Shown here in pieces: positions 18,701 through 49,525 of a stretch of DNA of 64,000 nt (the first letter of the stretch is position 1; every line of letters starts with the position of its first letter). The notes beneath the pieces are model-generated. The model did no database searches. It had not been told where the DNA came from and saw only the letters and a list, made by a program, of their open reading frames with translations. The position numbers and the translations under genes were made by a program. The stretch is taken from assembly GCF_963676685.1 (NCBI RefSeq), contig NC_092350.1, positions 18,600,001-18,664,000 of the forward strand. The letters are read 5' to 3'. Origin of the DNA: Mytilus edulis (taxonomy: Eukaryota).

Positions 18701-19577
18701 TTTATTTGATCAAGTGAAGACTTTTCAGCATGTGCAGTCTTTGTCATTTTAGTTGCATTTTATTAAGTTAATTATTTGTAAGTATGAATAAAGTGCCTTC
18801 GCAAAGAATTAAAATCTGACAATGTCAACCATATTGAAATTCCAAATATTTCACAGAGGCTAGTTTAACTATTCTTGCTTTTGTCTCTCACAGACACTAG
18901 ATATTGATACTCCAAAATAGAAAACAATGGACGTCTCTTCCCTCACAGCTCTTAAGCTATTCGATTAGTAAAATCCAATGAGATCATTTAAGTGAATTCT
19001 TTTCTTAAACCTCAATGAAATAGTACAGAAATCATGCAGATTGATTGCAACACTCTGTACGTTACAAACCCTTGGGCAAAAATCCGATATCTGTCCCTCA
19101 AGCATGCCCTTACTCTTTTAGTGTCGGACAAAATCACACCCCTTCATGCTTAGCATCCAAATATTGCATTAATTGTAAGTTTGTTCTCGCCTTATTTATT
19201 CATAAACTAATTGTCACTGGACGTTTATCTAAGATAAATCAGTCGATCAAATCGAAATGCCATACTAAAGAGACAGGGGACACTTAGTATCAACAGATGG
19301 AACAATTGAATTTGAATAAGATCTTCCCCTTTTCGTTGGGAAAACGATAGGCTGAAACAGTTGTTCAGTGACATAAAAACACACACAAAACTTTCATGTA
19401 GTAAGCAGTAAGTTGAAGCAGTTGAGACTGATTATTTTCTGAACTGTACAACGTCAAGAATATGGAAGTTGTTTTCCGTTCGTTCGGTTGGTTGATATTG
19501 TCGCAGATTTGATTTTGTCATGTTGTGTGAAAAGTACCCCTAGCTGCTATTATGATATGGAAACAAAGTGATGCCAC

Positions 19578-19945
19578 ACCAGGCAGAAGCTAGCGAACAA
19601 TAGCTAGCGAACAATAAGCCAGCGAACAATAAGGCGATATATCGAGAAACCAAAAAACACAATAAGACAACAACGGCCGTTAAATAAAAAAATATTTAAA
19701 AAGGCAGAAAATCAGTTAAAATATAGCAATTTAAACTCAATTTTGAAATGGTTTTTATCCAATCTATTGATTTAACAAGTCGCATAACTTTTTAGGCTAA
19801 TATTCAGTACCACAATAACTATGCATCTATCAACGGATTATTTGTAGGTGTAGGGCCACCTATGCACCCTCTTCAATTTAGAACGTATGTAAAAGTAGTC
19901 CTACCCTGTAAAATATAGCACCTTTTATGTCATTGTTTAATCTAC
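19578..19945 (+). repeat. Left outer TIR domain (~370 bp) of the foldback element
   Basis: Near-identical reverse complement of 37731-38101; contains three (G)CTAGCGAACAATA-type short repeats. Confidence 0.9.
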
Positions 19946-22900
19946 AGCTCAAAATTTGAAAAAAATGTCAAAAAATTAGGAGGGTCGGCCTATTCCAGGG
20001 CTTCTAGAGAAAAATAATGAGGGGTGTCACGGGGAATGACTATACAGGTCTTGTAGAGGAGAAACAGGCGCTTCTTTTGCGCTAGTTATCGAAGGGCGCT
20101 ATGTTCAAAAATCTGAAACTAGAGCTCAAAATTTGAAAAAAATGTCAAAAAATTAGGGGGGTCGGCCTATTCTAGGACTTCTAGAGAAAAATAATGAGGG
20201 GTGTCACGGGGTATGACTATATAGGTCTTGTAGAGGAGGAACAGGCGCTTCTTTTGCACTAGGTATCGAACGGTGCTATGTTCAAAAATCTGAAACTAGA
20301 GCTCAAAATTCGAAAAAAATGTCCAAAAAATGGGGGTAGGGTCGGCCTATTCCAGGAGTTCTAGAGAAAAATAATGAGGGGTGTCACGGGGTATGACTAT
20401 ATTGGTCATGTAGAAGAGAAATAGAAGCTTCTTTTGCGCTAGGTATCAAAGGGCGCTATGTTCAAAAATCTGAAACTAGAGCTCAAAATTTGAAAAAAAT
20501 GTCAAAAAATTAGGGGGGTCGGCCTATTCCAGGGCTTCTAGAGAAATATAATGAGGGATGTCACGGGGTATGACTATATAGGTCTTGTAGAGGAGAAACA
20601 AGCGCTTCTTTTGCGCTAGGTATCAAAGGGCGCTATTTTCAAAAATCTGAAACTAGAGCTCAAAATTTGAAAAAAATGTCAAAAAATTAGGGGGGTCGGC
20701 CTTTTCTAGGACTTCTAGAGAAAAATAATGAGGGGTGTCACGGGAAATGACTATATAGGTCTTGTAGAGGAGAAACAGGCGCTTCTTTTGCGCTAGGTAT
20801 CGAAGGGCGCTATGTTCAAAAATCTGAAACTAGAGCTCAAAATTTGAAAAAAATGTCAAAAAATTAGGGGGGTCGGCCTATTCTAGGACTTCTAGAGAAA
20901 AATAATGAGGGGTGTCACGGGGTATGACTATATAGGTCTTGTAGGAGAGGAACAGGCGCTTCTTTTGCACTAGGTATCGAACGGTGCTATGTTCAAAAAT
21001 CTGAAACTAGAGCTCAAAATTCGAAAAAAATGTCCAAAAAAATGGGGGTAGGGTCGGCCTATTCCAGGAGTTCTAGAGAAAAATAATGAGGGGTGTCACG
21101 GGGTATGACAATATAGGTCTTGTAGAAGAGAAACAGGCGCTTCTTTTGCGCTAGGTATCAAAGGGCGCTATGTTCAAAAATCTGAAACTAGAGCTCAAAA
21201 TTTGAAAAAAATGTCAAAAAATTAGGGGGGGTCGCCCTATTCCAGGGCTTCTAGAGAAAAATAATGAGAGGTGTCACGGGGAATGACTATATAGGTCTTG
21301 TAGAGGAGAAACAGGCGCTTCTTTTGCGCTAGGTATCAAAGGGCGCTATGTTCAAAAATCTGAAACTAGAGCTCAAAATTTGAAAAAAATGTCAAAAAAT
21401 TAGGGGGGTCGGCCTTTTCTAGGACTTCTAGAGAAAAATAATGAGGGGTGTCACGGGGAATGACTATATAGGTCTTGTAGAGGAGAAACAGGCGCTTCTT
21501 TTGCGTAAGGTATCGAAGGGCGCTATGTTCAAAAATCTGAAACTAGAGCTCAAAATTTGAAAAAAATGTCAAAAAATTAGGGGGGTCGTCCTATTCTAGG
21601 ACTTCTACAGAAAAAATAATGAGGGGTGTCACGGGGTATGACTATATAGGTCTTGTAGAGGAGGAACAGGCGTTTCTTTTGCACTAGGTATCGAACGGTG
21701 CTATGTTCAAAAATCTGAAACTAGAGCTCAAAATTTGAAAAAAATGTCAAAAAATTAGGGGGGTTGGCCTATTCCAGGGCTTCTAGAGAAAAATAATGAG
21801 GGGTGTCACGGGGTATGACTATATAGGTCTTGTAGAGGAGAAACAGGCGCTTCTTTTGCGCTAGGTATCGAAGGGCGCTATGTTCAAAAATCTGAAACTA
21901 GAGCTCAAAATTTGAAAAAAAATGTCAAAAAATTAGGGGGGTCGGCCTATTCCAGGGCTTCTAGAAAAAATAATGAGAGGTGTCACGGGGAATGACTATA
22001 TAGGTCTTGTAGAGGAGAAACAGGCGCTTCTTTTGCGCTAGGTATCGAAGGGCGCTATGTTCAAAAATCTGAAACTAGAGCTCAAAATTTGAAAAAATGT
22101 CAAAAAATTAGGGGGGTCGGCCTTTTCTAGGACTTCTAGAGAAAAATAATGAGGGGTGTCACGGGGAATGACTATATAGGTCTTGTAGAGGAGAAACAGG
22201 CGCTTCTTTTGCGTAAGGTATCGAAGAGCGCTATGTTCAAAAATCTGAAACTAGAGCTCAAAATTTGAAAAAAATGTCAAAAAATTAGGGGGGTCGTCCT
22301 ATTCTAGGACTTCTACAGAAAAATAATGAGGGGTGTCACGGGGTATGACTATATAGGTCTTGTAGAGGAGGAACAGGCGTTTCTTTTGCACTAGGTATCG
22401 AACGGTGCTATGTTCAAAAATCTGAAACTAGAGCTCAAAATTTGAAAAAAATGTCAAAAAATTAGGGGGGTTGGCCTATTCCAGGGCTTCTAGAGAAAAA
22501 TAATGAGGGGTGTCACGGGGTATGACTATATAGGTCTTGTAGAGGAGAAACAGGCGCTTCTTTTGCGCTAGGTATCGAAGGGCGCTATGTTCAAAAATCT
22601 GAAACTAGAGCTCAAAATTTGAAAAAAATGTCAAAAAATTAGGGGGGTCGGCCTATTCCAGGACTTCTAGAGAAAAATAATGAGGGGTGTCACGGGGAAT
22701 GACTATATAGGTCTTGTAGAGGAGAAACAGGCGCTTCTTTTGCGTTAGGTATCGAAGGGCGCTATGTTCAAAAATCTGAAACTAGAGCTCAAAATTTGAA
22801 AAAAATGTCAAAAAATTAGGGGGGTCGGCCTTTTCTAGGACTTCTACAGAAAAATAATGAGGGGTGTCACGGGGAATGACTATATAGGTCTTGTAGAGTA

Positions 22901-24598
22901 GAAACAGGCGCTTCTTTTGCGCTAGGTATCGAAGGGCGCTATGTTCAAAAATCTGAAACTAGAGCTCAAAATTTGAAAAAAATGTCAAAAAATTAAGGGG
23001 GTCGGCCTAATTTAGGACTTCTAGAGTAAAATAATGAGGGGTGTCACGGGGTATGACTATATAGGTCTTGTAGAGGAGAAACAGGCGCTTCTTATGCGCT
23101 AGGTATCGAAGGGCGCTATGTTCAAAAATCTGAAACTAGAGCTCAAAATTTGAAAAAAATGTCAAAAAATTAGGGGGGTCGGCCTATTCCAGGGCTTCTA
23201 GAGAAAAATAATGAGGGTTGTCACGTGGAATGACTATATAGGTCTTGTAGAGGAGAAACAGGCGATTCTTTTGCGCTAGTTATCGAAGGGCGCTATGTTC
23301 AAAAATCTGAAACTAGAGCTCAAAATTTGAACAAAATGTCAAAAAATTAGGGGGGTCGGCCTATTCTAGGACTTCTAGAGAAAAATAATGAGAGGTGTCA
23401 CGGGGAATGACTATAAAGGTCTTGTAGAGGATAAACAGGCGCTTCTTTTGCGCTAGGTATCGTAGGGCGCTATTTTCAAAAATCTGAAACTAGAGCTCAA
23501 AATTCGAAAAAAATGTCCAAAAAATTGGGGTAAGGTGTGCCTATTCCCGGAGTTCTAGAGAAAAATAATGAGGGGTGTCACGGCGTATGACTATATAGGT
23601 CTTGTAGAGGAGAAACAGGCGCTGCTTTGGCACTAGGTATCGATGGGCGCTATGTTCAAAAATCTGAAACTAGAGCTCAAAATTTGAAAAAAATGTCAAA
23701 AAATTAGGGGGTCGGCCTATTCCAGGGCTTCTAGAGAAAAATAATGAGGGGTGTCACGGGGAATGCCTATATAGGTCTTGTAGAGGAGAAACAGGCGCTT
23801 CTTTTGCACTAGCTATCGAAGGGCGCTATGTCAAAAATCTGAAACTAGAGCTCAAAATTCGAAAAAAAATGTCCAAAAAATGGGTGTAGGGTCGGCCTAT
23901 TCCAGGAGTTCTAGAGAAAAATAATGAGGGGTGTCACGGGGTATGACTATATAGGTCTTGTAGAAGAGAAACAGGTGCTTCTTTTGCGCTAGGTATCAAA
24001 GGGTGCTATGTTCAAAAATCTGAAACTAGAGCTCAAAATTTGAAAAAAATGTCAAAAAATTAGGGGGGTCGGCCTATTCCAGGGCTTCTAGAGAAAAATA
24101 ATGAGGGATGTCACGGGGTATGACTATATAGGTCTTGTAGAGGAGAAACAGGCGCTTCTTTTGCGCTAGGTATCGAAGGGCGCTATTTCAGAAATCTGAA
24201 ACTAGAGCTCAAAATTTGAAAAAAATGTAAAAAAATTAGGGGGGTCGGCCTTTTCTAGGACTTCTAGAGAAAAATAATGAGGAATGTCACAGGAAATGAC
24301 TATATAGGTCTTGTAGAGGAGAAACAGGCGCTTCTTTTGCGCTAGTGTCGAAGGGCGCTATGTTCAAAAATCTGAAACTAGAGCTCAAAATTAAAAAAAA
24401 ATGTCAAAAAATTAGGGGGTCGGCCTATTCTAGGACTTCTAGAGAAAAATAATGAGGGTTGTCACGGCGTATGACTATATAGGTCTTGTAGAGGAGGAAC
24501 AGGCGCTTCTTTTGCACTAGGTATCGAACGGTGCTATGTTCAAAAATCTGAAACTAGAGCTCAAAATTTGAACAAAATGTCAAAAAATTAGGGGGGTC
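19945..24598 (+). repeat. Satellite array, 177-181-bp monomer, about 26 copies (left arm)
   Basis: GAGCTC recurs at 20122, 20299, 20479, 20656, 20833, 21010, 21191 and onward; monomers also carry TCTAGA. Confidence 0.98.
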
Positions 24599-25095
24599 AC
24601 CCAGCAGCGGCATAACAAAAAAAAACTCATCATAAATACCAGACGCGAGTTTCGTCTACAAAAGACTCATTAGTGACGCTCGAATCAAAATAATGGTTGA
24701 AAGGCCAAAATAAAGGACGAAGTTGAAGATCATTGAGAACCAAACATTCCTAGCAGTTTTGCCAAATACAGGTAAGACAGTTTATTCCTGGTGTAGAAAA
24801 ACCTTAGTTTTTTTCAAAAATTCAAAGCGGTGTTAATTTATAAGATTATATTAATGATAAGCCAAGTCAACACACAAGTGCCAACTACTGGGATGGTGAT
24901 ACCCTCGGGGAAATAAATCTTTACCAGCAGTGGCATCGACTCAGAGGTTGCATTTTAAGTTTTAACTCATCATAGATACCAGTATTTTAATTTTATATTT
25001 ACGCCAGACGCGCGTTTCGTCTACAATATATCAGTGAATGTCCTGTGAAGGGAAAACAGGCGCATCGTTTGCGTAAGACTTCAAAAGGTGCTATG
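24598..25095 (+). repeat. Left inner inverted-repeat domain (dispersed repeat plus degenerate satellite monomer)
   Basis: Reverse complement of ~28610-29097. Confidence 0.9.
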
Positions 25096-25249
25096 TTCAA
25101 TTTTGTCGAAAGGAACTAAAAAAAAATAAAAACTGAACTGTCAGACAAGAACGCGAAAACAAAAAAAAAACCACCAACATATCAGAGTCAGTAAAAACTA
25201 ATTTTCAAAATCTTGTCATATAAAGTCATAATTTCCCCATCCGAATAAC

Positions 25250-25803
25250 ATGATAAAAGAGTTTGTAAAATGTGTTATGTAAATACTGATAAAAAGAATG
25301 CTGATTACTGGCTGATTTTCTTTTTCAAGGGTATGTCGAAAAGAAAACGACGAAGATGAAAGAACTTTAGTGCGAATACCAGCTGGTATATAACCTAAAG
25401 TTCCATATACACTTACATACTTAATAGACAGTCTACTTTTTATTCTTTCAAAAGTTTTTTTCATATCGGAGGTTTTGTACCAGATAACCAAAATCAGCAA
25501 AGAATACTGCATTGTTAAAAAAGTATGATAGTAAAACTACAAACAGACCAGTTATCTTTATCAATGACAATACAAGCGCCACAACCTTAAAGACGGTATA
25601 AGTACCCTCGTCCACGTGCGGGTGTTGTCTGATAAAAATAGATGTACATGTATACACATGGAAAAAAGTATTTTGTAAAATGTGTTATGTAAATACTGAT
25701 AAAAAATGCTGATTACTGGCTGATTTTCTTTTTCAAGGGTATGTCGAAAAGAAAACGACGAAGATAAAAAACTTTAGTGCGATTGCCAACTGGTATATAA
25801 CCA
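25250..25803. repeat. ~145-bp direct repeat (25250-25395 and 25657-25803)
   Basis: tttgtaaaatgtgttatgtaaatactgataaaaa...tggtatataacc occurs twice, ~410 bp apart. Confidence 0.9.
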
Positions 25804-26039
25804 AATTGGAATTGAAATTAAAAAAACACTCTTTATTTTTTTATGATATAATTTGTTAAAATAGAACTAGTTAAACACTATTTAAATATCACCTGAGTTT
25901 GATCAATAATTATCGACTCGATAAGTTCTTATCTGCACATGCAGCTACTGTACCCGTACACAGCAAAACATGTGTTTTTATCCTCATTGTTTTCAACACT
26001 TTAAATAACCAAGTTTATAAAGTTATGTGATTGACACCT

Positions 26040-26750
26040 TGAAATAGGTCCTCCACAACTCTTAACCGCAGCAAGATGGTAGATTATCAGCATGAGAGAG
26101 GCAGGAATGTCGCTGTGACAATTGCACGTATTGTCGTTCAGCACTTTTCCACTATTAGTCGTTTAGAGAATAAAAATCAGGCAATACACGATATAAAACA
26201 CTATCCGAGACCAAAAAGACCCCCTATGCCACCTGCTATGGAAAATCAAGCATGATGAAGCTTAGTCAGAAAGAAACCCATTGCATACAATACAATCCTG
26301 AAAAGAGAGGGGTGGGCATACAGGAGCCTTTTAACAATAATTGTTCGAGATTGAATCATCCCTTCTGGTTATTGTGCGATAAGACCATTTCAGGGACGTT
26401 TGCTTACGAACAGACACACAGTTATCCGTATTCAATGTAGTGCAGAGCTCGCCAAAATTGGAAATAAGCATCGTGGAGGATGATCCATTGTTCAAATGGA
26501 ATTCTGTTTATCTTCCTTGGTCCAATCATAGCCCGGATTTGAACCATATCAAGGATGTATGGGACACTATTGGGCGTAATTTGCACAAAAGGACACCCCA
26601 GTCCAAACACGTGATGAAATAAACAATGCCCTTCATCAGAAATGGTTGCTGCTACCTAAGCAACAAATTAGTCGATTTATGGCAGAAATCATAAGACGTT
26701 AAGTGGCGGTTGACCGTTTAAATGGAGACTGCGCACGAAGTGCTATTTCT
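26040..26750 (+). pseudogene. Decayed Tc1/mariner transposase, copy 1 (internally deleted)
   Basis: HTH-like N-terminal remnant (MREAGMSL) and LPWSNHSPDLNHIKDVWDTIGR, matching the Tc1 WPxxSPDLNPIE.W motif; frameshifts and stops. Confidence 0.8.
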
Positions 26751-27429
26751 TTGGCGTATAACGATTAACCATGATGTGAACAATCATCTTAAGATTAATT
26801 TTGAAATGTCTGACATTGTAAAGTTCGACTACAGTAAAAGTTGTAAAATGCAGTTTTTTGTACAAAAAAACACCTCATTTTGTTTTTAGAATTGTGGTTA
26901 GATAAATATTTTTTTTTTCAAACATTTTTTGTTCGTTAAAATGCCAATGTTTTCATAAACTATGTTTCAATATTATTTTACAAATATTTTATCATATTCC
27001 ATCCAAAATAAAGGCTGATTATTCAAGTTTTAAAAAATCAATATTTTGCAATACTTTTTTCCATGTGTATATATAAAAAAAGAAACATTACTTTGCTTTT
27101 TAAGTAAAATATATTTAATATATTGGTTTGTAATATTTTCACGATTAATAAAGGCAACAGTAGTATACCGCTGTTCAAAACTCATAAATCCATGGACAAA
27201 AACAAAATCGGGGTAACAAACTAAAACCGAGGGAAACGCATTAAATATAAGAGGAGAACAACGACACAACACCGAAACGCAACACACACAGAAACGGACC
27301 AAGCAAAACTAATGACCTGAATAATCTATTCATGATCATTTAGTATTTTCTTTTAAATTCGAAGATAACTTTACGCCATTTTCCGATTTCAAACAAATAC
27401 GCATTTTTTCAACCATTTACCTTTATAGA

Positions 27430-28212
27430 GATGGAACTGAGTTGTCCTTTTGATCATTAAATGTATCGAGCACTATTCAATGTCTCTAGAATGACTTTGA
27501 AAGGCGCTAAAGACTCGTCTTAGAGATACTGGTACAACATTTTAACGTCCCCGAGGTTGCAACTCACGCGAAACGAAGTTATGTGAAGATTGGCAAATCC
27601 GCATTATTTATCTCCGTAATCGATTTGAAGAAACTCATGGAAGAAACAAAAATAGGCTATATGCGCAAACAGTTTGTAACCGACTTCATCTGGGCAGCCT
27701 AAGAGCTCGTCGTTCGTTGAAGTGATCTATCCTTACGCAGAATCGAAGGATGTCGCGAGTTGAATGGAGAGGGTACGGATTCGATGACATAGACTAACAT
27801 GGAGACTAATCCTTTTTACCGCTGAATCGAAATTCAACTTGACATTTATCGATGACAGAGACATGGTCTGCCGCAGGTACAAGGCATGCTTTTTGATGCG
27901 TGCGTACAGGAAACAAATTGGCTTTAGGGTGGCGAATTAATGGTATGGGATGGATAACCTACCAGGAACGCCCCGATCTGACAATTAGTGAAGGAAACCT
28001 AAATGCAAAAAGGGAATAGGAACGAAATTCTGGCTCCACTAGTTCTCCCGTTTCTCCGAAGGCATCGTTAAACTACATTTTAAACAGAAAACGCCCGTTG
28101 TAAACACATTTTAATGAATTTTGGAGAATAATCGCATTCGAGTGTTGTCGTGGCCAGTATTGTCTTCAGATTATCGCCAATGGGACATCTTTGGGACGAA
28201 CTTGGACGACTC
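27430..28212 (+). pseudogene. Decayed Tc1/mariner transposase, copy 2
   Basis: Remnant motifs LFTAESKFNL (FTDES), GGELMVWDG (GGSVMVWG), NAR (QDNAxPH) and VLSWPVLSSD..PMGHLWDELGR; multiple frameshifts. Confidence 0.8.
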
Positions 28213-28219
28213 ACCAAAA

Positions 28220-28608
28220 AGATATTTTATCGTGTGTTTTTCTATGTTGTGATGTTATGCTATTGTTTCAGAAAAAGGGAGAAGGTTTGGATCCATTAAA
28301 ACGTTTAATCCCGCTGCAAATGTTTGCACCTGTCCTAAGTTAGGAATCTGATGTACAGTAGTTGTCGTTTGTTTGTGTAATATATACGTGTTTCTCGTTT
28401 CTCGTTTTGCTTATATAGATTAAACCGTTGGTTTTCCCGTTTGAATGGTTTTACACTAGTAATGTTGGGGCTCTTTATAGCTTGTTGTTCGGTGTGAGCC
28501 AAGGCTCCGTGTTGAAGGCCGTACTTTAACCTATAATGGTTTACTTTTTAAATTGTTATTTGGATGGAGAGTTGTCTCATTGGCACTCACACCACATCTT
28601 CCTTTTTC
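28220..28608 (+). mobile_element. SINE-like dispersed repeat
   Basis: 3' end tggatggagagttgtctcattggcactcacaccacatcttcc is shared with ~18405-18440 and, on the reverse strand, ~7720-7770. Confidence 0.6.
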
Positions 28609-28609
28609 T

Positions 28610-29097
28610 ATAGCACCCTTTAAAGTCTTACGCAAACGATGCGCCTGTTTTCCCTTCACAGGACATTCACTGATATATTGTAGACGAAATGCGCGTCTGG
28701 CGTAAATATAAAATTTAAATACTGGTATCTATGATGAGTTAAAACTTAAAATACAACCACTGAGTCGACGCCATTGCTGGTAGAGATTTATTTCCCCGAG
28801 GGTATCACCAGCCCAGTAGTCAGCACTTGTGTTGACTTGGCTTATCATTGATATAATCTTATAAATTAACACCGTTTTAAATTTTTGAAAAAAACTAAGG
28901 TTTTTCTACACCAGGAATGCCTTACCTGTATTTTGCAAAACTACTAGGAATGTTATGTTCTCAATGTTCTTCAACTTCGTCCTTTATTTTGGCCTTTCAA
29001 TCATTATTTTGATTCGAGCGTCACTAATGAGTCTTTGTAGATAAAACGCGCGTCTGGTATTTATGATGAGTTTTTTTGTGTTATTCCGCTACTGGAT
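28610..29097 (-). repeat. Right inner inverted-repeat domain
   Basis: Reverse complement of 24598-25095. Confidence 0.9.
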
Positions 29098-32000
29098 GAC
29101 CCCCCTTATTTTTTGCCTTTTTTTTTAAATTTTGAGCTCTAGTTTCAGATTTTTGAACAAAGTGCCCTTCGATACCTAGCGCAAAAGAAGCGCCTGTTTC
29201 GCCTCTACAAGACCTATATAGTCATTCCCCGTGACACCCCTCATTATTTTTCTCTAGAAGCCCTGGAATAGGCCGACCCTCCTAATTTTTTGACATTTTT
29301 TTTCAAATTTTGAGCTCTAGTTTCAGATTTTTGAACATAGCGACCTTCGATACCTAGCGCAAAAGAAACGACTGTTTTTCTTCTACAAGACCTATATAGT
29401 CCTACCCCGTGACACCCCTCATTATTTTTCTCTAGAAGCCCTGGAATAGGCCGACCCTCCTAATTTTTTGACATTTTTTTTCAAATTTTGAGCTCTAGTT
29501 TCAGATTTTTGAACATAGCGGCCTTCGATACCTAGCGCAAAAGAAACGACTGTTTCTCTTCTACAAGACCTATATAGTCATACCCCGTGACACCCCTCAT
29601 TATTTTTCTCTAGAACTCCTGGAATAGGCCGACCCTACCCCCATTTTTTTGACATTTTTTTCGAACTTTGAGCTCTAGTTTCAGATCTTTGAACATAGCG
29701 CCCTTCGATTCCTAGTGCTAAAGAAGCGCCTGTTTCTCCTCTACAAGACCTATATAGTCATACCCCGTGACACCCCTCATTATTTTTCTCTAGAAGTCCT
29801 AGAATAGGCCGACCCCCCTATTTTTTTGACATTTTTTTCAAATTTTGAGCTCTAGTTTCAGATTTTTGAACATAGCGCCCTTTGATACCTAGCGCAAAAG
29901 AAGCGCCTGTTTCCCCTCTACAAGACCTATATAGTCATACCCCGTGACATCCCTCATTATTTTTCTCTAGAACTCCTGGAATAGGCCGACCCTACCCCCA
30001 TTTTTTGGACATTTTTTTCGAATTTTGAGCTCTAGTTTCAGATTTTTGAACATAGCGCCCTTCGATACCTAGCGCAAAAGAAGCGGCTGTTTCCCCTCTA
30101 CAAGACCTATATAGTCATACCCCGTGACATCCCTCATTATTTTTCTCTAGAACTCCTGGAAAAGGCCGACCCTACCCCCATTTTTTGGATTTTTTTTTTC
30201 GAATTTTGAGCTGTAGTTTCAGATTTTTGAACAAAGCGCCCTTCGATACCTAGTGCAAAAGAAGCGCATGTTTCTCCTCTACAAGACCTATATAGTCATA
30301 CCCCGTGACACCCTTCATTATTTTTCTCTAGAAGTCCTAGAATAGGCTGACCCCCCTAATTTTTTGACATTTTTTTCGAATTTTGAGCTTTAGTTTCAGA
30401 TTTTTGAACATAGCACCCTTCGATACCTAGTGCAAAAGAAGCGCCTGTTTCTCCTCTACAAGACCTATATAGTCATACCCCGTGACACCCCTCATTATTT
30501 TTCTCTAGAAGTCCTAGAATAGGCCGACCCCTCTAATTTTTTGACATTTTTTTCAAATTTTGAGCTCTAGTTTCAGATTTTTGAACATAGCGCCCTTCGA
30601 TACCTAGCGCAAAAGAAGCGCCTGTTTCTGCTCTACAAGACTTATATAGTCATTCCCCGTGACACCCCTCATTATTTTTCTCTAGAAGCCCTGGAATAGG
30701 CCGACCCTCCTAATTTTTTGACATTTTTTTCAAATTTTGAGCTCTAGTTTCAGATTTTTGAACATAGCGCCCTTCGATACCTAGTGCAAAAGAAGCGCCT
30801 GTTTCTCTTCTACAAGACCTATATAGTTATACCCCGTGACACCCCTCATTATTTTTCTCTAGAAGTCCTGGAAAAGGCCGACCCCCCTAATTTTTTGACA
30901 TTTTTTTCAAATTTTGAGCTCTAGTTTCAGATTTTTGAACATATCACCCTTCGATACCTAGCGCAAAAGAAGCGCCTGTTTCTCCTCCTCAAGACCTATA
31001 TAGTCATACCCCGTGACACCCCTCATTATTTTTCTCTAGAAGCCCTGGAATAGGCCGACCCCCCTAATTTTTTGACATTTTTTTCAAATTTTGAGCTCTA
31101 GTTTCAGATCTTTGAACATAGCGCCCTTCGATTCCTAGTGCTAAAGAAGCGCCTGTTTCTCCTCTACAAGACCTATATAGTCATACCCCGTGACACCCCT
31201 CATTATTTTTCTCTAGAAGTCCTAGAATAGGCCGACCCCCCTATTTTTTTGACATTTTTTTCAAATTTTGAGCTCTAGTTTCAGATTTTTGAACATAGCG
31301 CCCTTCGATACCTAGCGCAAAAGAAGCGCCTGTTTCCCCTCTACAAGACCTATATAGTCATACCCCGTGACATCCCTCATTATTTTTCTCTAGAACTCCT
31401 GGAATAGGCCGACCCTACCCCCATTTTTTGGATTTTTTTTTCGAATTTTGAGCTGTAGTTTCAGATTTTTGAACAAAGCGCCCTTCGATACATAGTGCAA
31501 AAGAAGCGCATGTTTCTCCTCTACAAGACCTATATAGTCATACCCCGTGACACCCTTCATTATTTTTCTCTAGAAGTCCTAGAATAGGCTGACCCCCCTA
31601 ATTTTTTGACATTTTTTTCGAATTTTGAGCTTTAGTTTCAGATTTTTGAACATAGCGCCCTTCGATACCTAGTGCAAAAGAAGCGCCTGTTTCCCCTCTA
31701 CAGGACCTATATAGTCATACCCCGTGACACCCCTCATTATTTTTCTCTAGAAGTCCTAGAATAGGCCGACCCCCCTAATGTTTTGACATTTTTTTCAAAT
31801 TTTGAGCTCTAGTTTCAGATTTTTGAACATAGCGCCCTTCGATACCTAGCGCAAAAGAAGCGCCTGTTTCTGCTCTACAAGACTTATATAGTCATTCCCC
31901 GTGACACCCCTCATTATTTTTCTCTAGAAGCCCTGGAATAGGCCGACCCTCCTAATTTTTTGACATTTTTTTTCAAATTTTGAGCTCTAGTTTCAGATTT

Positions 32001-32418
32001 TTGAACATAGCGCCCTTCGATACCTAGTGCAAAAGAAGCGCCTGTTTCTCTTCTACAAGACCTATATAGTTATACCCCGTGACACCCCTCATTATTTTTC
32101 TCTAGAAGTCCTGGAAAAGGCCGACCCCCCTAATTTTTTGACATTTTTTTCAAATTTTGAGCTCTAGTTTCAGATTTTTGAACATATCACCCTTCGATAC
32201 CTAGCGCAAAAGAAGCGCCTGTTTCTCCTCCTCAAGACCTATATAGTCATACCCCGTGACACCCCTCATTATTTTTCTCTAGAAGCCCTGGAATAGGCCG
32301 ACCCCCCTAATTTTTTGACATTTTTTTCAAATTTTGAGCTCTAGTTTCAGATTTTTGAACATAGCGCCCTTTGATACCTAGCGCAAAAGAAGCGCCTGTT
32401 TCTCTTCTTCAAGACCTA

Positions 32419-33147
32419 AAAAAAGACCTTCTTCAAAAAATAAAGATTGCATATTTTGGCTTTAACATTGATTCACTGATAGGGTCTTTGCATCGGAACT
32501 AAACACATTTATTTCTAAAAAAAAAAAAACAGTTGTTGGCATGACACGGGTTATGTTCTTCTCATATATTTTATGATAGTATGATACTAAACCCCTAACG
32601 GGAGGGATTGTACCTGATATTCATATGATGAAGACATAATCTTTCAATCAGTTTAATTGAGGTCTGGAGCTGGCTTGTCAGTTAACTGCTAGTAGTCTGT
32701 TGTTATTTATGTATTATTGTCATTTTATTTATTTTCTTTTGTTACATCTTTTGACATCAGACTCGGACTTCTCTTGAACTGAATTTTAATGTGCGTATTG
32801 TTATTCTTTTACTTTTCTACATTGGCTAGAGGTATAGGGGGAGGGTTGAGATCTCATAAACATGTTTAACCCCGCCGCAATTTTGCGCCTGTCCCAAGTC
32901 AGGAGCCTCTGGCCTTTGTTAGTCTTGTATGATTTTAAATTTTAGTTTCTTGTGTATAATTCGGAGTTTAGTATGACGTCCATTATCACTGTACTATTAT
33001 GCATATTTTAGGGGCCAGCTGAAGGACACCTACGGGTGCGGGAATCCTCGCTACATTGAAGACCCATTGGTTGCCTTCGGCTGTTGTTTGCTCTATGGTC
33101 GGGTGGTTGTCGCTTTGACATATTCACCATTTCCTTTCTCAATTTTA
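32419..33147 (+). mobile_element. ~730-bp SINE/non-LTR-like repeat inserted in the satellite, copy A
   Basis: Interrupts monomer aagaccta|tatagtc with a short (C)TA duplication; a diverged inverse copy lies at ~61016-61625. Confidence 0.8.
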
Positions 33148-34397
33148 CTATATAGTCATACCCCGTGACACCCCTCATTATTTTTCTCTAGAACTCCTGG
33201 AATAGGCCGACCCTACCCCCATTTTTTTGGACATTTTTTTCGAATTTTGAGCTCTAGTTTCAGATTTTTGAACATAGCGCCCTTCGATACATAGCGCAAA
33301 AGAAGCGCCTGTTTCCCGTCTACAAGACCTATATAGTCATACCCCGTGACATCCCTCATTATTTTTCTCTAGAACTCCTGGAATAGGCCGACCCTACCCC
33401 CATTTTTTGGATTTTTTTTTCGAATTTTGAGCTGTAGTTTCAGATTTTTGAACAAAGCGCCCTTCGATACATAGTGCAAAAGAAGCGCATGTTTCTCCTC
33501 TACAAGACCTATATAGTCATACCCCGTGACACCCTTCATTATTTTTCTCTAGAAGTCCTAGAATAGGCTGACCCCCCTAATTTTTTGACATTTTTTTCGA
33601 ATTTTGAGCTTTAGTTTCAGATTTTTGAACATAGCGCCCTTCGATACCTAGTGCAAAAGAAGCGCCTGTTTCCCCTCTTCAAGACCTATATAGTCATACC
33701 CCGTGACACCCCTCATTATTTTTCTCTAGAAGTCCTAGAATAGGCCGACCCCCCTAATGTTTTGACATTTTTTTCAAATTTTGAGCTCTAGTTTCAGATT
33801 TTTGAACATAGCGCCCTTCGATACCTAGCGCAAAAGAAGCGCCTGTTTCTGCTCTACAAGACTTATATAGTCATTCCCCGTGACACCCCTCATTATTTTT
33901 CTCTAGAAGCCCTGGAATAGGCCGACCCTCCTAATTTTTTGACATTTTTTTTCAAATTTTGAGCTCTAGTTTCAGATTTTTGAACATAGCGCCCTTCGAT
34001 ACCTAGTGCAAAAGAAGCGCCTGTTTCTCTTCTACAAGACCTATATAGTTATACCCCGTGACACCCCTCATTATTTTTCTCTAGAAGTCCTGGAAAAGGC
34101 CGACCCCCCTAATTTTTTGACATTTTTTTCAAATTTTGAGCTCTAGTTTCAGATTTTTGAACATATCACCCTTCGATACCTAGCGCAAAAGAAGCGCCTG
34201 TTTCTCCTCCTCAAGACCTATATAGTCATACCCCGTGACACCCCTCATTATTTTTCTCTAGAAGCCCTGGAATAGGCCGACCCCCCTAATTTTTTGACAT
34301 TTTTTTCAAATTTTGAGCTCTAGTTTCAGATTTTTGAACATAGCGCCCTTTGATACCTAGCGCAAAAGAAGCGCCTGTTTCTCTTCTTCAAGACCTA

Positions 34398-35126
34398 AAA
34401 AAAGACCTTCTTCAAAAAATAAAGATTGTATATTTTGGCTTTAACATTGATTCACTGATAGGGTCTTTGCATCGGAACTAAACACATTTATTTCTAAAAA
34501 AAAAAAAACAGTTGTTGGCATGACACGGGTTATGTTCTTCTCATATATTTTATGATAGTATGATACTAAACCCCTAACGGGAGGGATTGTACCTGATATT
34601 CATATGATGAAGACATAATCTTTCAATCAGTTTAATTGAGGTCTGGAGCTGGCTTGTCAGTTAACTGCTAGTAGTCTGTTGTTATTTATGTATTATTGTC
34701 ATTTTATTTATTTTCTTTTGTTACATCTTTTGACATCAGACTCGGACTTCTCTTGAACTGAATTTTAATGTGCGTATTGTTATTCTTTTACTTTTCTACA
34801 TTGGCTAGAGGTATAGGGGGAGGGTTGAGATCTCATAAACATGTTTAACCCCGCCGCAATTTTGCGCCTGTCCCAAGTCAGGAGCCTCTGGCCTTTGTTA
34901 GTCTTGTATGATTTTAAATTTTAGTTTCTTGTGTATAATTCGGAGTTTAGTATGACGTCCATTATCACTGTACTATTATGCATATTTTAGGGGCCAGCTG
35001 AAGGACACCTACGGGTGCGGGAATCCTCGCTACATTGAAGACCCATTGGTTGCCTTCGGCTGTTGTTTGCTCTATGGTCGGGTGGTTGTCGCTTTGACAT
35101 ATTCACCATTTCCTTTCTCAATTTTA
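34398..35126 (+). mobile_element. ~730-bp insertion, copy B (arose by 1979-bp tandem duplication)
   Basis: Virtually identical to copy A with identical junctions, offset by 1979 bp. Confidence 0.85.
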
Positions 35127-37730
35127 CTATATAGTCATACCCCGTGACACCCCTCATTATTTTTCTCTAGAACTCCTGGAATAGGCCGACCCTACCCCCA
35201 TTTTTTTGGACATTTTTTTCGAATTTTGAGCTCTAGTTTCAGATTTTTGAACATAGCGCCCTTCGATACCTAGCGCAAAAGAAGCGCCTGTTTCCCCTCT
35301 ACAAGACCTATATAGTCATACCCCGTGACATCCCTCATTATTTTTCTCTATAACTCCTGGAATAGGCCGACCCTACCCCCATTTTTTGGACATTTTTTTC
35401 GAATTTTTAGCTCTAGTTTCAGATTTTTGAACATAGCGCCCTTCGATACCTAGCGCAAAAGAAGCGCCTGTTTCTCCTCTACAAGACCTATATAGTCATA
35501 CCCCGTGACATCCCTCATTATTTTTCTCTATAACTCCTGGAATAGGCCGACCCTACCCCCATTTTTTGGACATTTTTTTCGAATTTTTAGCTCTAGTTTC
35601 AGATTTTTGAACATAGCGCCCTTCGATACCTAGTGCAAAAGAAGCGCCTGTTTCTCCTCTACAAGACCTATATAGTCATACCCCGTGACACCCCTCATTA
35701 TTTTTCTCTAGAAGTCCTAGAATAGGGCGACCCCCCTAATTTTTTGACATTTTTTTCGAATTTTGAGCTCTAGTTTCAGATTTTTGAACATAGCGCCCTT
35801 TGATACCTAGCGCAAAAGAAGCGCCTGTTTCTCCTCTACAAGACCTATATAGTCATTCCCCGTGACACTCCTCATTATTTTTCTCTAGAAGTCCTAGAAT
35901 AGGCCGACCCCCCTAATTTTTTGACATTTTTTTCAAATTCTGAGCTCTAGTTTCAGATTTTTGAACATAGCGCCCTTCGATACCTAGCGCAAAAGAAGCG
36001 CCTATTTCTCCTCTACAAGACCTATATAGTCATTCCCCGTGACACCCCTCATTATTTTTCTCTATAACTCCTGGAATAGGCCGACCCTACCCCCATTTTT
36101 TGGACATTTTTTTCGAATTTTGAGCTCTAGTTTCAGATTTTTGAACATAGCGCCCTTCGATACCTAGCGCAAAAGAAGCGCCTGTTTCTCCTCTACAAGA
36201 CCTATATAGTCATACCCCGTGACATCCCTCATTATTTTTCTCTATAACTCCTGGAATAGGCCGACCCTACCCCCATTTTTTGGACATTTTTTTCGAATTT
36301 TTAGCTCTAGTTTCAGATTTTTGAACATAGCGCCCTTCGATACCTAGTGCAAAAGAAGCGCCTGTTTCTCCTCTACAAGACCTATATAGTCATACCCCGT
36401 GACACCCCTCATTATTTTTCTCTAGAAGTCCTAGAATAGGGCGACCCCCCTAATTTTTTGACATTTTTTTCGAATTTTGAGCTCTAGTTTCAGATTTTTG
36501 AACATAGCGCCCTTCGATACCTAGCGCAAAAGAAGCGCCTGTTTCTCCTCTACAAGACCTATATAGTCATTCCCCGTGACACTCCTCATTATTTTTCTCT
36601 AGAAGTCCTAGAATAGGCCGACCCCCCTAATTTTTTGACATTTTTTTCAAATTTTGAGCTCTAGTTTCAGATTTTTGAACATAGCGCCCTTCGATACCTA
36701 GCGCAAAAGAAGCGCCTATTTCTCCTCTACAAGACCTATATAGTCATTCCCCGTGACACCCCTCATTATTTTTCTCTAGAAGTCCTAGAATAGGCCGACC
36801 CCCCTAATTTTTTGACATTTTTTTCAAATTTTGAGCTCTAGTTTCAGATTTTTGAACATAGCGCCCTTCGATACCTAGCGCAAAAGAAGCGCCTATTTCT
36901 CCTCTACAAGACCTATATAGTCATTCCCCGTGACACCCCTCATTATTTTTCTCTATAACTCCTGGAATAGGCCGACCCTACCCCCATTTTTTGGACATTT
37001 TTTTCGAATTTTGAGCTCTAGTTTCAGATTTTTGAACATAGCGCCCTTCGATACCTAGCGCAAAAGAAGCGCCTGTTTCTCCTCTACAAGACCTATATAG
37101 TCATACCCCGTGACATCCCTCATTATTTTTTTCTATAACTCCTGGAATAGGCCGACCCTACCCCCATTTTTTGGACATTTTTTTCGAATTTTTAGCTCTA
37201 GTTTCAGATTTTTGAACATAGCGCCCTTCGATACCTAGTGCAAAAGAAGCGCCTGTTTCTCCTCTACAAGACCTATATAGTCATACCCCGTGACACCCCT
37301 CATTATTTTTCTCTAGAAGTCCTAGAATAGGGCGACCCCCCTAATTTTTTGACATTTTTTTCGAATTTTGAGCTCTAGTTTCAGATTTTTGAACATAGCG
37401 CCCTTCGATACCTAGCGCAAAAGAAGCGCCTGTTTCTCCTCTACAAGACCTATATAGTCATTCCCCGTGACACCCCTCATTATTTTTCTCTAGAAGTCCT
37501 AGAATAGGCCGACCCCCCTAATTTTTTGACATTTTTTTCAAATTTTGAGCTCTAGTTTCAGATTTTTGAACATAGCGCCCTTCGATACCTAGCGCAAAAG
37601 AAGCGCCTATTTCTCCTCTACAAGACCTATATAGTCATTCCCCGTGACACCCCTCATTATTTTTCTCTAGAAGCCCTAAAATAGGCCAACCCTCCTAATT
37701 TTTTGACATTTTTTCAAATTTTGAGCTCTA

Positions 37731-38101
37731 GATTAAACAATGACATAAAAGGTGCTATATTTTACAGGGTAGGACTACTTTTACATACGTTCTAAATTGA
37801 AGAGGGTGCATATATATAGGTGGCCCTACACCTACAAATAATCCGTTGATAGGTGCATAGTTATTGTGGTACTGAATATTAGCTTAAAAAGCTATTGGAC
37901 TTGTTAAATCAATAGATTGGATAAAAACCATTTCAAAATTGAGTTTAAATTGCTATATTTTAACTGATTTTCTGCCTTTTGAAATATTTTTTTATATAAC
38001 GGCCGTTGTTGTCTGATTCTGTTTTTTGGTTTCTCGATATATCGCCTTATTGTTCGCTGGCTTATTGTTCGCTAGCTATTGTTCGCTAGCTTCTGCCTGG
38101 T
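37731..38101 (-). repeat. Right outer TIR domain of the foldback element
   Basis: Reverse complement of 19578-19945. Confidence 0.9.
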
Positions 38102-38918
38102 AGATGCCACTTGGATATAACCCATAATAAAACCACTTTTGGTTTCAATCAATTTTAGAATTATATTTCTGAAAGTGTTAGAAAGAAATAGTATGCCTAA
38201 AACTTGGATATTTTGGTTCTGTACTTTTAAGCATGAGTTGATATCTCGAATGTCCAGCGATTATTGTTGAATCTTTTACAGATTTGTCTATGAATCTTTT
38301 CAATTAGATAATATTTGACAGTTGTTGCATCACATGTACGTGTTTGAATGCAGCTTCATACATTTTGCATTTTTTAGTCTGATATTTATTGCCAGAGTTG
38401 TCATCAACAATCAATCTAGAATTCTGAAAGAAAGCAAGCAGTAAAATTTGTTTTATCACTACTATGTTAATGTTTGTGTATGCATAAACCAATTGTTCAA
38501 AGTGGAAAAGATTTATATCCTGATAGGTCATCAAAGATAAACATATATATATTTTTTATCATCTTTCTGCATTTGATTCCAGAAAAAAATCTATGAGACA
38601 TATGTAGGCCTATTGTAAATTTTACGTAATGTTCACGATTTAAGAGTGATTTTTAACGTTAATTTTTTGCGAAGTGATAGGCTACACGGTACTGACGAAT
38701 TATCAGTTGAATAAGTTCTCAAATTTCATTTATAGCATACTATAAAGTCTATCCAAATCACAAAAAAGTATAAAATAAACAATTACCAATGTGTGGATTA
38801 GATAAACATGTCAGCATTTCATTGCGTAGGAGAAAAATGAGTTTGAAAATCGGGAAATGTTTGATTATATAGGAGTATATATTAACTCACCGTTTTACGG
38901 GTGACACCCTACCTTTAA

Positions 38919-44009: not shown

Positions 44010-44365
44010 GAAAAAAATCCATGTATATCATTTACATGTGTACAACGGTCCTTTTAAGGACCAACAAATCATTCAAAAAGAGTCTATTATTGTTGTACAT
44101 GATCAGTTCGTTTTTCCTCTCCAACGAATACGAAATATCTACAAAAGGTTCACAACTTGTTTATTTTCGAAGAAAAGAAAACTAGATTGTACATTTTATT
44201 ACTTTCAATTGATAAACATACATTATTTCAACTAAAACAACAATATGATAACAAAAGTTTTCATATTGAACATTGGAAATTACATCTTCTTAATGAAATT
44301 CTACTATAAAATATAGACATATATATATATTTTGTGTATTTAAAAAAAAATCATTTTGAGTTAAC

Positions 44366-47573: not shown

Positions 47574-47956
47574 CATCATTACTAATGAACAATTGATAAA
47601 ATATGTTATTTTCTATGTCAAAATAAAGATTGATAAAAAAGTGTTTTTTGGTTTTTCTTTAAATTTTATTTCCATGTTACAATTTAAAAACTAACTTGAG
47701 TTGTTCCATATACTTTAATGTAAAAAATAAATCATTAAAAAAAACAGCAGAAAAAAACAATAAAAAAAAACAACAACAAAAATACTTTCAATGTACAAAA
47801 AAAACATAATATATATTTTTTTTTCATTTTCAGGTACAACCCCAATATTATACACTTTGATTTGATAAAAAAAACCTATAAAAACTATTCTTATGATTAC
47901 TTTTAATAAGACTCTTGTAGTTGTTAGAAGTAACATCTTATCAAAATAACCTGAGT

Positions 47957-49518: not shown

Positions 49519-49525
49519 CGCAGAT

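What the first reader, a model, noticed from the sequence alone, without database searches (positions are those of the whole stretch)
19569..38110. 18.5-kb foldback transposon whose inverted arms are satellite DNA arrays
Seen: the layout is TSD, 370-bp TIR, ~26 satellite monomers, 500-bp inner IR, 3.5-kb loop, inner IR, ~40 inverted monomers, TIR, TSD. The flanks TGATGCCAC/AGATGCCAC indicate that the whole unit inserted as one piece. Established: Drosophila FB and some MULEs have modular, tandem-repeat-rich inverted arms of unequal length and 9-bp TSDs, whereas bivalve satellites are mostly linked to Helentron/HINE elements with a single central array. Inference: this is a different vehicle that spreads paired, head-to-head arrays of nucleosome-sized (177-181 bp) satellite into gene-rich DNA. 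It has no transposase of its own and would need mobilisation in trans.
Basis: partly seen in the sequence, partly recalled or inferred. Interest (0 to 1): 0.87.

Follow-up and report, generated by a model that had tools for sequence, protein, structure and literature searches.

The report
Mussel foldback transposon carrying satellite arrays
This 18.5-kb stretch is one of about 85 young copies of a gene-less "foldback" jumping element in a mussel genome; its two long inverted arms hold essentially all of one 177-bp satellite DNA, an arrangement already known from the fly element Tetris but much larger here.

Summary
The layout is 9-bp target duplication (8 of 9 letters match), 367-bp terminal inverted repeat, 26 and 40 monomers of a 177-bp satellite in opposite orientation, a 496-bp inner inverted repeat, and a 3.5-kb centre.

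It is not an assembly artefact. The genome holds 171 such termini, or about 85 elements. I listed 37 clean +/- pairs of 3-45 kb on many chromosomes. Eleven of 13 pairs checked have exact 9-bp target duplications. Terminal repeats are 99.5-100% identical to their consensus.

A monomer-specific word occurs 4,702 times genome-wide, about 82 elements' worth. So essentially all of this satellite is carried by the family.

None of nine sequenced copies has an ORF over 151 aa or a Pfam domain in its centre. The 13-nt terminus is shared with no other family. The transposase partner is therefore unidentified. Mutator/Foldback is inferred from the 9-bp duplication and the foldback plan only.

A contig from another species label stops exactly at the element's first base, which suggests an empty site there.

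The domain plan equals that of Drosophila Tetris. I file it as a new member of a known kind, apparently undescribed in bivalves. The scan had noted other foldback families in this genome, but not this one.

The parts
19569..19577 (.). Left copy of the 9-bp target site duplication (TGATGCCAC)
   Evidence: It abuts the first base of the terminal repeat. Other copies have exact 9-bp duplications.
19578..19944 (+). Left terminal inverted repeat, the 'flanking domain' (367 bp), starting ACCAGGCAGAAG
   Evidence: pairs with 38101-37729. (40 scored genomic matches at 99-100%). (99.7% to the family consensus).
19587..19633 (+). Three tandem 15-bp subterminal repeats inside the terminal repeat; candidate transposase-binding sites (inferred)
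   Evidence: period 15, 3.2 copies. Mirrored at 38046-38092. Present in the consensus of all 18 terminal repeats.
19942..24598 (+). Left satellite array: 26 monomers of 177-181 bp plus a 44-48-bp partial monomer ('outer domain', arm type A)
24599..25094 (+). Inner domain of arm A (496 bp), inverted repeat partner of 28610-29095
   Evidence: 98-99.6% identical to the A-arm inner domains of other copies.
25095..28609 (.). Middle domain, non-coding, an internally deleted version. The deletion junction is at 28222|28223 with GA microhomology, and about 4.9 kb present in other copies is missing.
   Evidence: (junction unique in the genome). (intact marker in 46 places).
28610..29097 (-). Inner domain of arm B, inverted, about 93% identical to arm A
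29098..37731 (-). Right satellite array: 40 inverted monomers plus a partial one (arm type B), including a copy-specific 1,979-bp segmental duplication
32419..33147 (.). Nested insertion of a young ~707-bp dispersed repeat inside a monomer (first of two duplicated copies)
   Evidence: (at least 323 candidate places, 99% identity).
34398..35126 (.). Second copy of the same nested insertion. It is 99.9% identical, at the same monomer position, and was duplicated together with seven monomers.
37729..38101 (-). Right terminal inverted repeat. It is unusually diverged: 8 substitutions plus a 6-bp insertion against the consensus.
   Evidence: (the variant occurs only here).
38102..38110 (.). Right copy of the target site duplication (AGATGCCAC; one mismatch to the left copy)

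Best explanation
The stretch is one copy of a young family of about 85 non-autonomous foldback DNA transposons in a mussel genome.

Each copy has the same plan:
- a 367-bp terminal inverted repeat with three 15-bp subterminal repeats;
- an array of 10-50 monomers of a 177-bp satellite;
- an inner domain of 496 bp, extending about 1.8 kb further in full copies;
- a non-coding middle domain;
- the same parts again, inverted.

Shown:
- The whole unit inserts as one piece and makes a 9-bp target duplication.
- The copies are dispersed and nearly identical.
- The satellite exists essentially only inside these elements.
- The arrays change length in each copy by local multi-monomer duplications, while their outer and inner edges stay orthologous.
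- No sampled copy encodes a protein.

Inferred:
- A transposase supplied in trans binds the terminal and subterminal repeats and moves the element by cut-and-paste.
- That enzyme most likely belongs to the Mutator/Foldback (Phantom-like) superfamily. The grounds are that foldback elements with 9-bp duplications usually do, and that the genome holds many open MULE-domain frames.
- Pairing of the long arms brings the two ends together despite 12-30 kb of length.

The window copy is an older, internally deleted derivative.
For: Structure.

Family size and dispersal:
- 1,115 first-look candidates; the 40 scored are 99-100% identical and lie in +/- pairs.
- 76 + 95 = 171 termini against 0 for the control pattern, with 37 clean pairs of 3.0-44.6 kb among the first 100 listed.

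Whole-unit insertion: searches give exact 9-bp duplications in 11 of 13 pairs, including elements of 25-30 kb. The window copy has 8 of 9.

Satellite confined to the family: the monomer word occurs 4,702 times genome-wide, in balanced orientation (2,440 / 2,262). My nine elements hold 516, or 57 each. That makes about 82 elements' worth.

Youth:
- Terminal repeats are 99.5-100% identical to their consensus.
- Inner domains differ by 0.6-2.7% between copies.

Non-autonomy:
- No ORF over 151 aa in nine centres.
- No Pfam hit.
- The same non-coding middle-domain marker sits in 46 places. Those I could compare lie inside or beside known termini.

Array dynamics.

Possible transposase sources in trans: 142 MULE-domain matches, many in open frames of 400-500 aa.

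Reality of the left junction: Logan contigs of two runs (X15, X16) read from the single-copy flank 28 and 20 letters into the terminal repeat without a difference. A 497-nt contig of another species label (X6) matches 19199-19577 and departs exactly at the last flank base, with 118 further letters.

Literature:
- Tetris has the same domain plan, 8-10-bp duplications and no transposase (PMC4079207).
- Tm1 is a Mutator/Foldback family with 9-bp duplications and a Phantom-like transposase (PMC3169594).
- MULEs are present in all bivalves surveyed, while Merlin is rare in them (PMC10294476).
Against: - No transposase was tied to the family. None of the 142 MULE-domain matches lies inside the 37 known element intervals. 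The nearest is 748 bp outside one element's right end.
- The 13-nt terminus occurs in no other family (4 hits against 3 for the control). So no autonomous relative with the same ends was detected.
- Superfamily assignment from duplication length alone is weak.
- The junction contigs reach fewer than 31 letters into the repeat, below the reads tool's own criterion for bridging.
- The letters of the X6 loose end were not shown, so the empty site is probable, not proven.
- How much of each array was present at the time of insertion is known only for the outer 5-8 monomers.
Confidence: 0.8

Rival explanations
1. It is the same foldback transposon family, but mobilised by a transposase that is not Mutator/Foldback. 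Candidates are an atypical hAT, P or Merlin enzyme, or an undescribed superfamily that makes 9-bp duplications.
For: No MULE-domain match lies inside any known element interval. No related autonomous element shares the terminus. The foldback shape has arisen independently in other superfamilies, for example Galileo in the P superfamily, as stated in PMC4079207.
Against: The 9-bp duplication is consistent: 11 exact of 13. hAT and P elements typically give 8 bp and Galileo 7 bp (established knowledge). Merlin is rare in bivalves (PMC10294476). Foldback families with 9-bp duplications that have a known enzyme, FB and Tm1, are Mutator-type (PMC3169594).
Confidence: 0.2
2. The family is not wholly non-autonomous. 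One of the roughly 76 copies not read here carries the transposase gene in its middle domain, as FB4 does among Drosophila FB elements.
For: Only 9 copies were read. Element lengths reach 44.6 kb. The intact middle-domain marker is found in only 46 of about 85 copies, so about 39 copies have some other centre. The terminus is exclusive to the family, which is what one would expect if the master is a member.
Against: Nine of nine copies lack any ORF over 151 aa. No MULE-domain match falls within the 37 known intervals, though only 150 of 335 candidates were scored and only one protein family was tried.
Confidence: 0.15
3. It is an assembly artefact or a local inverted duplication of a satellite array, not a mobile element.
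For: Long near-palindromes are a known failure mode of assemblers. No long read spanning the whole element was available.
Against: The same plan appears at 37 or more separate loci on many chromosomes, with different single-copy flanks and exact 9-bp duplications. The arms are not mirror copies: the inner domains differ by 7% and the arrays differ in length and monomer order. Independent contigs reach into the left junction.
Confidence: 0.01
4. Each arm (terminal repeat + array + inner domain) is an independent one-ended unit, and the foldback is two such units that landed head to head.
For: Termini are unbalanced (76 forward, 95 reverse), and about 28 of the first 100 listed lack a listed partner.
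Against: The 9-bp duplications flank the pair, not each arm. The two arm types A and B, and the same middle domain, recur together in copy after copy. Unpaired termini are expected from one-mismatch partners that were not listed, from haplotigs such as C2333, and from contig ends.
Confidence: 0.03

Closest known systems
Tetris, foldback transposon of Drosophila virilis / D. americana (Dias et al. 2014, PMC4079207)
   Same: The domain plan is the same: flanking domain, outer domain of roughly nucleosome-length tandem repeats (220 bp there, 177 bp here), inner domain, and a non-coding middle domain. Duplications are 8-10 bp. No transposase is present and the partner is unknown. Repeat number varies between copies and alleles.
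   Different: Tetris has only three structurally complete copies, with about three to four repeats per arm. Its repeats also form separate satellite arrays of up to 66 copies, and its authors suggest that long arrays disable transposition. Here about 85 complete copies carry 10-50 monomers per arm with intact ends and duplications, and no free-standing arrays were detected in the assembly. Tetris's repeat shares 37 bp with its flanking domain; here no similarity was found. Sequence relatedness to Tetris was not tested.
Drosophila melanogaster FB (Foldback) elements and nematode Tm1 (PMC3169594)
   Same: Long composite inverted arms built of tandem repeats, variable and unequal arm lengths, 9-bp target duplications, and mostly non-coding copies.
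   Different: FB arm repeats are short (tens of bp, from my own knowledge) and Tm1 arms are short composite motifs. Some FB and Tm1 copies encode a Mutator/Phantom-type transposase; none was found here. Arms here are 3-11 kb of 177-bp satellite plus unique domains.
Helentron/HINE-type non-autonomous elements carrying satellite-like arrays in oysters and other bivalves (pearl, CvA, MgE, DTC84; PMC7492417, PMC3879986)
   Same: A mobile element disperses short satellite arrays through euchromatin of a bivalve genome.
   Different: Those elements carry one central array, have no long terminal inverted repeats and make no 9-bp duplication, being rolling-circle type. Here there are two inverted arrays, 367-bp terminal inverted repeats and 9-bp duplications.
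Galileo of Drosophila buzzatii (P superfamily foldback-like element)
   Same: Very long inverted arms containing internal tandem repeats. The repeats are proposed to act as extra transposase-binding sites (as cited in PMC4079207).
   Different: Galileo gives 7-bp duplications and encodes a P-type THAP transposase in its full copies (established knowledge). Here duplications are 9 bp and there is no coding copy.

Membership tests
Foldback-type transposons (structural class: FB, Tetris, Tm1, TU) | Long terminal inverted arms with a modular make-up that includes tandem repeats | tested here: met
   367-bp flanking domain + 177-bp array + inner domain on both sides, in 9 of 9 copies.
Foldback-type transposons (structural class: FB, Tetris, Tm1, TU) | Arm length variable between copies and unequal within a copy | tested here: met
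   10 to 50 monomers per arm. The window copy has 26 against 40.
Foldback-type transposons (structural class: FB, Tetris, Tm1, TU) | Target site duplication of about 9 bp flanking the whole unit | tested here: met
   11 of 13 pairs are exact at 9 bp, one has 8 of 9, and one has 6 of 9.
Foldback-type transposons (structural class: FB, Tetris, Tm1, TU) | Multiple dispersed copies with insertion polymorphism (mobility) | tested here: met
   171 termini across the chromosome-scale contigs listed. Flanks are single-copy. There is a probable empty site in run X6, though its letters were not seen.
Tetris-like domain plan | Order flanking domain - tandem-repeat outer domain - inner domain - non-coding middle domain | tested here: met
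   compared with the description in PMC4079207.
Tetris-like domain plan | Sequence homology to Tetris / DAIBAM | not tested
Homology between a fly and a mussel element is not expected.
Mutator / MULE superfamily (including Foldback and Phantom) | A DDE transposase with a MULE domain encoded by an autonomous member that shares the termini | tested here: inconclusive
   None in nine copies. None of 142 MULE-domain matches lies inside the 37 known intervals. The terminus is shared with no other family. About 76 copies were not read.
Mutator / MULE superfamily (including Foldback and Phantom) | Target duplication of 9-11 bp | tested here: met
   9 bp.
Helentron / HINE satellite carriers of bivalves | No terminal inverted repeats of this length, no target duplication, a single central array | tested here: not met
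   367-bp terminal inverted repeats, 9-bp duplications and two inverted arrays.
hAT superfamily | 8-bp target duplication | tested here: not met
   In each of the 11 exact pairs the matching suffix and prefix is 9 bp, not 8.

The most novel reading that the evidence does not exclude
The most novel reading not excluded is that long satellite arrays are no burden here but part of what makes the element mobile and persistent.

In one version the arrays act as the pairing device, or as an extended transposase-binding surface, that lets a 12-30-kb unit transpose efficiently. In another version the ends are regenerated from one another through the foldback. This would explain why the outer 367 bp of the two arms are 99-100% alike while the inner domains of the same arms are 7% apart.

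If so, the family would be a natural system in which a satellite owes its whole existence and spread to transposition. That contradicts the published suggestion that long arrays disable foldback elements.
Probability: 0.12. Interest if true: 0.8.

Novelty: new member of a known kind. Interest (0 to 1): 0.55.

Why it matters
**Satellite origin.** This is a clean natural case for the question of how satellite DNA is born and dispersed. One 177-bp satellite, about 4,700 monomers, appears to live entirely inside about 85 recently mobile foldback elements. Array turnover can therefore be read copy by copy against a dated backbone.

**Arrays and mobility.** Arrays of many kilobases coexist with intact ends and perfect target duplications. 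The Tetris authors suspected that this could not happen.

**Bivalve genomes.** It adds a second, mechanistically different carrier of satellite arrays beside the Helentron-type elements.

**Genome stability.** It places about 85 near-palindromes of 12-45 kb in the genome, which are candidate hot spots for rearrangement.

**Practical use.** The insertions should be good presence/absence markers within the Mytilus species complex.

Tried and rejected
**Autonomous copy**
- ORF scans of nine centres found nothing over 151 aa.
- Pfam on the seven longest centre ORFs found nothing.
- A MULE domain search of the whole genome gave 142 matches. None lies inside the 37 known intervals, and one lies 748 bp outside an element on C10.
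- A search for the 13-nt terminus followed by a different letter gave 4 hits, equal to the control. So no sister family with the same ends exists.

**Empty site inside the assembly.** Both flanks are single-copy, so no haplotig carries an empty site.

**Further copies.** The 3.0-kb mini-copy on C7, the 44.6-kb copy on C8 and the MULE-adjacent copy on C10 could therefore not be read.

**Is the window's diverged right terminal repeat a subfamily?** No. The variant is private to this copy.

**Did the window's internally deleted form spread?** No. The junction is unique.

**Do the flanking domain and the monomer share sequence, as in Tetris?** No hit at word size 7.

**Other searches**
- Rfam over the window found nothing inside the element.
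- Earlier notes of this scan held nothing for this family, by sequence or by words. Other foldback families with 4-bp and 7-bp duplications were noted in the same genome.
It was redone from files.
- A BLAST identity filter for shared array blocks failed and was replaced by a monomer-diagonal count.

**Reads.** Only Logan contigs were on offer, so no long read spans the element.
Full report
**1. Checking the observation**

Tandem Repeats Finder reports a 177-bp array at 19942-24598 (26.3 copies, 92% matches). It reports the same unit, inverted, at 29098-37731. The inverted-repeat search returns 818 arm pairs between the two arrays. GC skew flips from +0.30 to -0.27 between them.

BLAST of the non-satellite parts gives two inverted pairs:
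- An outer pair, 19578-19944 against 38101-37729 (373 columns, 96.0%).
- An inner pair whose non-satellite part is 24599-25094 against 29095-28610 (about 93%).

The loop between them is 25095-28609, 3,515 bp.

The flanks read TGATGCCAC before the first base and AGATGCCAC after the last.

One thing was missed. Two 729-bp inserts interrupt the right array at 32419-33147 and 34398-35126. They are 99.9% identical and sit at the same monomer position.

**2. It is a family, not a one-off**

The window is C7:18600001-18664000 of a 1.37-Gb assembly of 2,368 contigs. Earlier notes of this scan call the genome a blue mussel. I did not verify that.

The 367-bp terminal repeat has 1,115 first-look candidates. 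All 40 that were scored are 99-100% identical and lie in +/- pairs 12-44 kb apart. The first 24 letters of the terminus, with up to one mismatch, occur 76 times forward and 95 times in reverse. The control pattern gives 0. That makes about 85 elements. Among the first 100 places listed I count 37 clean +/- pairs of 3.0 to 44.6 kb on contigs C1 and C3-C12 (the listing stops within C12), most of them 17-32 kb.

I fetched eight further complete copies.

**3. Whole-unit insertion**

The letters outside the termini differ from locus to locus right up to the first base. Of 13 pairs with both ends in hand:
- 11 have an exact 9-bp direct repeat, including elements of 25-30 kb.
- The window copy has 8 of 9.
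- One copy on C4 has 6 of 9, in a way that looks like a 3-bp loss beside the right end.

No target consensus is evident. A 9-letter match has a chance probability of about 4e-6 per pair. Both flanks of the window copy are single-copy in the genome.

**4. Common anatomy**

- A 367-bp flanking domain that begins ACCAGGCAGAAG and holds three 15-bp tandem repeats.
- An array of 10-50 monomers that always starts at the same junction. In the eight copies that keep their inner domains it ends 44-48 bp into a monomer.
- A 496-bp inner domain. In full copies the inverted repeat continues for about 1.8 kb further.
- A middle domain of about 4 kb.

The two arms are of two types. Types A and B differ by about 7% in the inner domains within every copy. 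The same arm type differs by only 0.6-2.7% between copies. So the asymmetry predates the burst of copies.

Some copies depart from the A/B pattern. One is A/A and one looks B/B. One copy on C9 has lost its inner and middle domains but keeps an exact duplication.

The window copy lacks about 4.9 kb of the middle and of the inner part of arm B. The junction, at 28222|28223, has a 2-bp microhomology and is unique in the genome. The deletion therefore arose at this locus, or at least did not spread. A marker of the intact middle domain occurs 46 times, once per locus. Those I could compare lie inside or beside known termini.

**5. No coding capacity**

No centre has a stop-free frame over 151 aa. 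The seven longest have no Pfam match. Rfam finds nothing inside the element.

**6. The satellite**

I extracted 528 complete monomers from nine elements. Their consensus is 177 bp with 42% G+C. Mean pairwise difference is 6.2%. It is about the same within an arm (6.0%), between the arms of one element (6.3%) and between elements (6.2%). The variant library is therefore older than the burst, and the arms do not homogenise each other.

Evidence on how the arrays evolve:
- The first monomer is position-specific in nearly all arms.
- B arms share an outer block of eight variant classes in the same order. At three or fewer differences per monomer, the longest orthologous run is five monomers, against a background of 0.9% for a single pair.
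- The innermost monomer is specific to the arm type.
- Between the edges, each copy has its own multi-monomer duplications. The window's right arm has a six-monomer unit three times, and two of these carry the nested 729-bp insert (a 1,979-bp duplication).

This is the classic edge-conserved, centre-turnover pattern of unequal exchange or slippage. It runs faster than point substitution.

A monomer-specific 22-letter word, with up to one mismatch, occurs 516 times in my nine elements. It occurs 4,702 times in the genome, 2,440 forward and 2,262 in reverse, against a control of 1. At 57 per element that is about 82 elements' worth, close to the roughly 85 counted from termini. Within the assembly, then, the satellite lives essentially only in this family, as paired head-to-head arrays. 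Unassembled blocks cannot be excluded.

No similarity links the flanking domain to the monomer.

**7. Age and the odd right end**

Seventeen of 18 terminal repeats are 99.5-100% identical to their consensus. The window's right one is 96.3%, with eight substitutions and a 6-bp insertion, and the variant is private. The window copy's inner domains are 1.1-2.3% from those of the other copies (excluding the atypical C7:51.69 Mb copy). This fits a somewhat older copy and also fits the single mismatch in its duplication.

One thing stays unexplained. Flanking domains are in general less diverged than inner domains, and left and right flanking domains are alike while inner domains are 7% apart.

**8. 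Reads**

Only Logan contigs were available. In two runs of one species label (X15, X16), contigs of single-copy depth run from the flank 28 and 20 letters into the terminal repeat without a difference. A 31-mer assembly cannot go further than that into a 171-copy repeat. It is, however, below the tool's 31-letter rule for bridging.

In a run of another label (X6), a 497-nt contig at the local single-copy depth matches 19199-19577. It stops exactly at the last flank base, with 118 more letters that do not fit the repeat. This is what an empty site would look like, but the letters were not shown, so I rate it probable and not proven.

The terminal repeat and the monomer are at high depth in all four runs. 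The family is therefore shared by at least three species labels.

**9. The transposase**

The genome has at least 142 MULE-domain matches, many in open frames of 400-500 aa. Enzymes of the expected kind are thus available in trans. None lies inside the 37 known intervals. One lies 748 bp beyond the right end of the copy at C10:59925928-59944865. I estimate the chance of such an adjacency at roughly 0.03-0.04, and I could not read the region.

The 13-nt terminus followed by any other letter occurs four times, as often as the control. So no other family shares these ends.

The superfamily is an inference from three things:
- the 9-bp duplication;
- the foldback plan;
- the literature: Tetris is assigned to Mutator on the same grounds, Tm1 has a Phantom-like enzyme, and MULEs are general in bivalves while Merlin is rare.

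**10. Comparison with what is known**

The plan is that of Tetris, domain for domain, with 8-10-bp duplications and no transposase. The differences are of scale and state:
- About 85 intact copies against three.
- 10-50 monomers per arm against a few.
- No free-standing arrays in the assembly against arrays of up to 66 copies.
- Intact ends and duplications in spite of long arrays, where the Tetris authors suggest that long arrays disable the element.

The Helentron-type carriers of oyster satellites differ in every defining feature. Full-text searches for foldback elements or satellitomes in Mytilus found no description of this family. The library is incomplete, and Repbase and Dfam could not be consulted.

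**11. Verdict**

I file it as a new member of a known kind, a Tetris-like foldback transposon, notable for its size, copy number, youth and monopoly of its satellite. The step from 'foldback with 9-bp duplications' to 'Mutator superfamily' remains untested.

Noticed in passing
window 32419-33147 and 34398-35126: The nested 729-bp inserts are copies of a ~707-bp dispersed repeat. That repeat has at least 323 candidate places, and the scored ones are 99% identical, so it is a very young high-copy element of unknown type. The first 22 letters of each insert are not part of the repeat. The insertion site shows a 3-bp CTA repeat.
   Followed up: partly
L031:4875-6343 (copy at C9:88.07 Mb): A different 1,469-bp insertion sits within one base of the same monomer position as the window's nested insert. 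It is flanked by a TA repeat. This may be a preferred target inside the monomer (…ACTATATAGGTC…).
   Followed up: no
L031:8109-10000 + L032:1-155 (copy at C9:88.07 Mb): This 12.4-kb copy has no inner or middle domain. Between its arrays lie 2 kb of a low-complexity repeat that translates as TNQP runs. It still has an exact 9-bp duplication.
   Followed up: no
G000:C10:59945613-59945906: A MULE-domain match (E 1.6e-8, open frame 191 aa) lies 748 bp outside the right terminus of the family copy at C10:59925928-59944865. My estimate of the chance of such an adjacency is about 0.03-0.04. The region could not be fetched.
   Followed up: no
G000:C7:50023534-50026517: Two perfect termini in +/- orientation lie only 2,984 bp apart. 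This is a mini-version of the element with about 2.2 kb between the terminal repeats. It was not read.
   Followed up: no
window 37729-38101: The right terminal repeat of the window copy carries 8 substitutions and a 6-bp TATATA insertion that occur nowhere else in the genome. The left one differs from the consensus at one position. The asymmetry is unexplained.
   Followed up: partly
window 51913-55815 (-): An uninterrupted 1,300-aa ORF with C2H2 zinc fingers and a recombination endonuclease VII domain. It is probably the protein of another large mobile element.
   Followed up: no
window 46007-51240 (+): A run of ORFs with an integrase core and a chromodomain. It looks like a Gypsy-type LTR retrotransposon, apparently split over several frames.
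   Followed up: no
window 44042-44087 (+): An Rfam histone 3' UTR stem-loop (36.3 bits, gathering score 34) about 6 kb downstream of the element. The Tm1 foldback family of nematodes includes members with a histone-hairpin motif. No link is shown here.
   Followed up: no
window 40792-42069 (-) and 59269-60783 (-): ORFs with a B-box (425 aa) and with a RING plus B-box (504 aa). These are TRIM-like genes and are the nearest host genes to the element.
   Followed up: no
window 18304-18471: A short stretch about 1.1 kb left of the element has summed contig depth above one million in all four runs laid. This indicates an extremely abundant short repeat (SINE- or MITE-like).
   Followed up: no
L033/L034 (copy at C7:51.69 Mb): This copy has A-type inner domains on both arms. 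Its two A segments are 2.9% apart, and one of them is 4.1-4.5% from all other copies. This looks like a mosaic, perhaps from conversion between arms or between elements.
   Followed up: no
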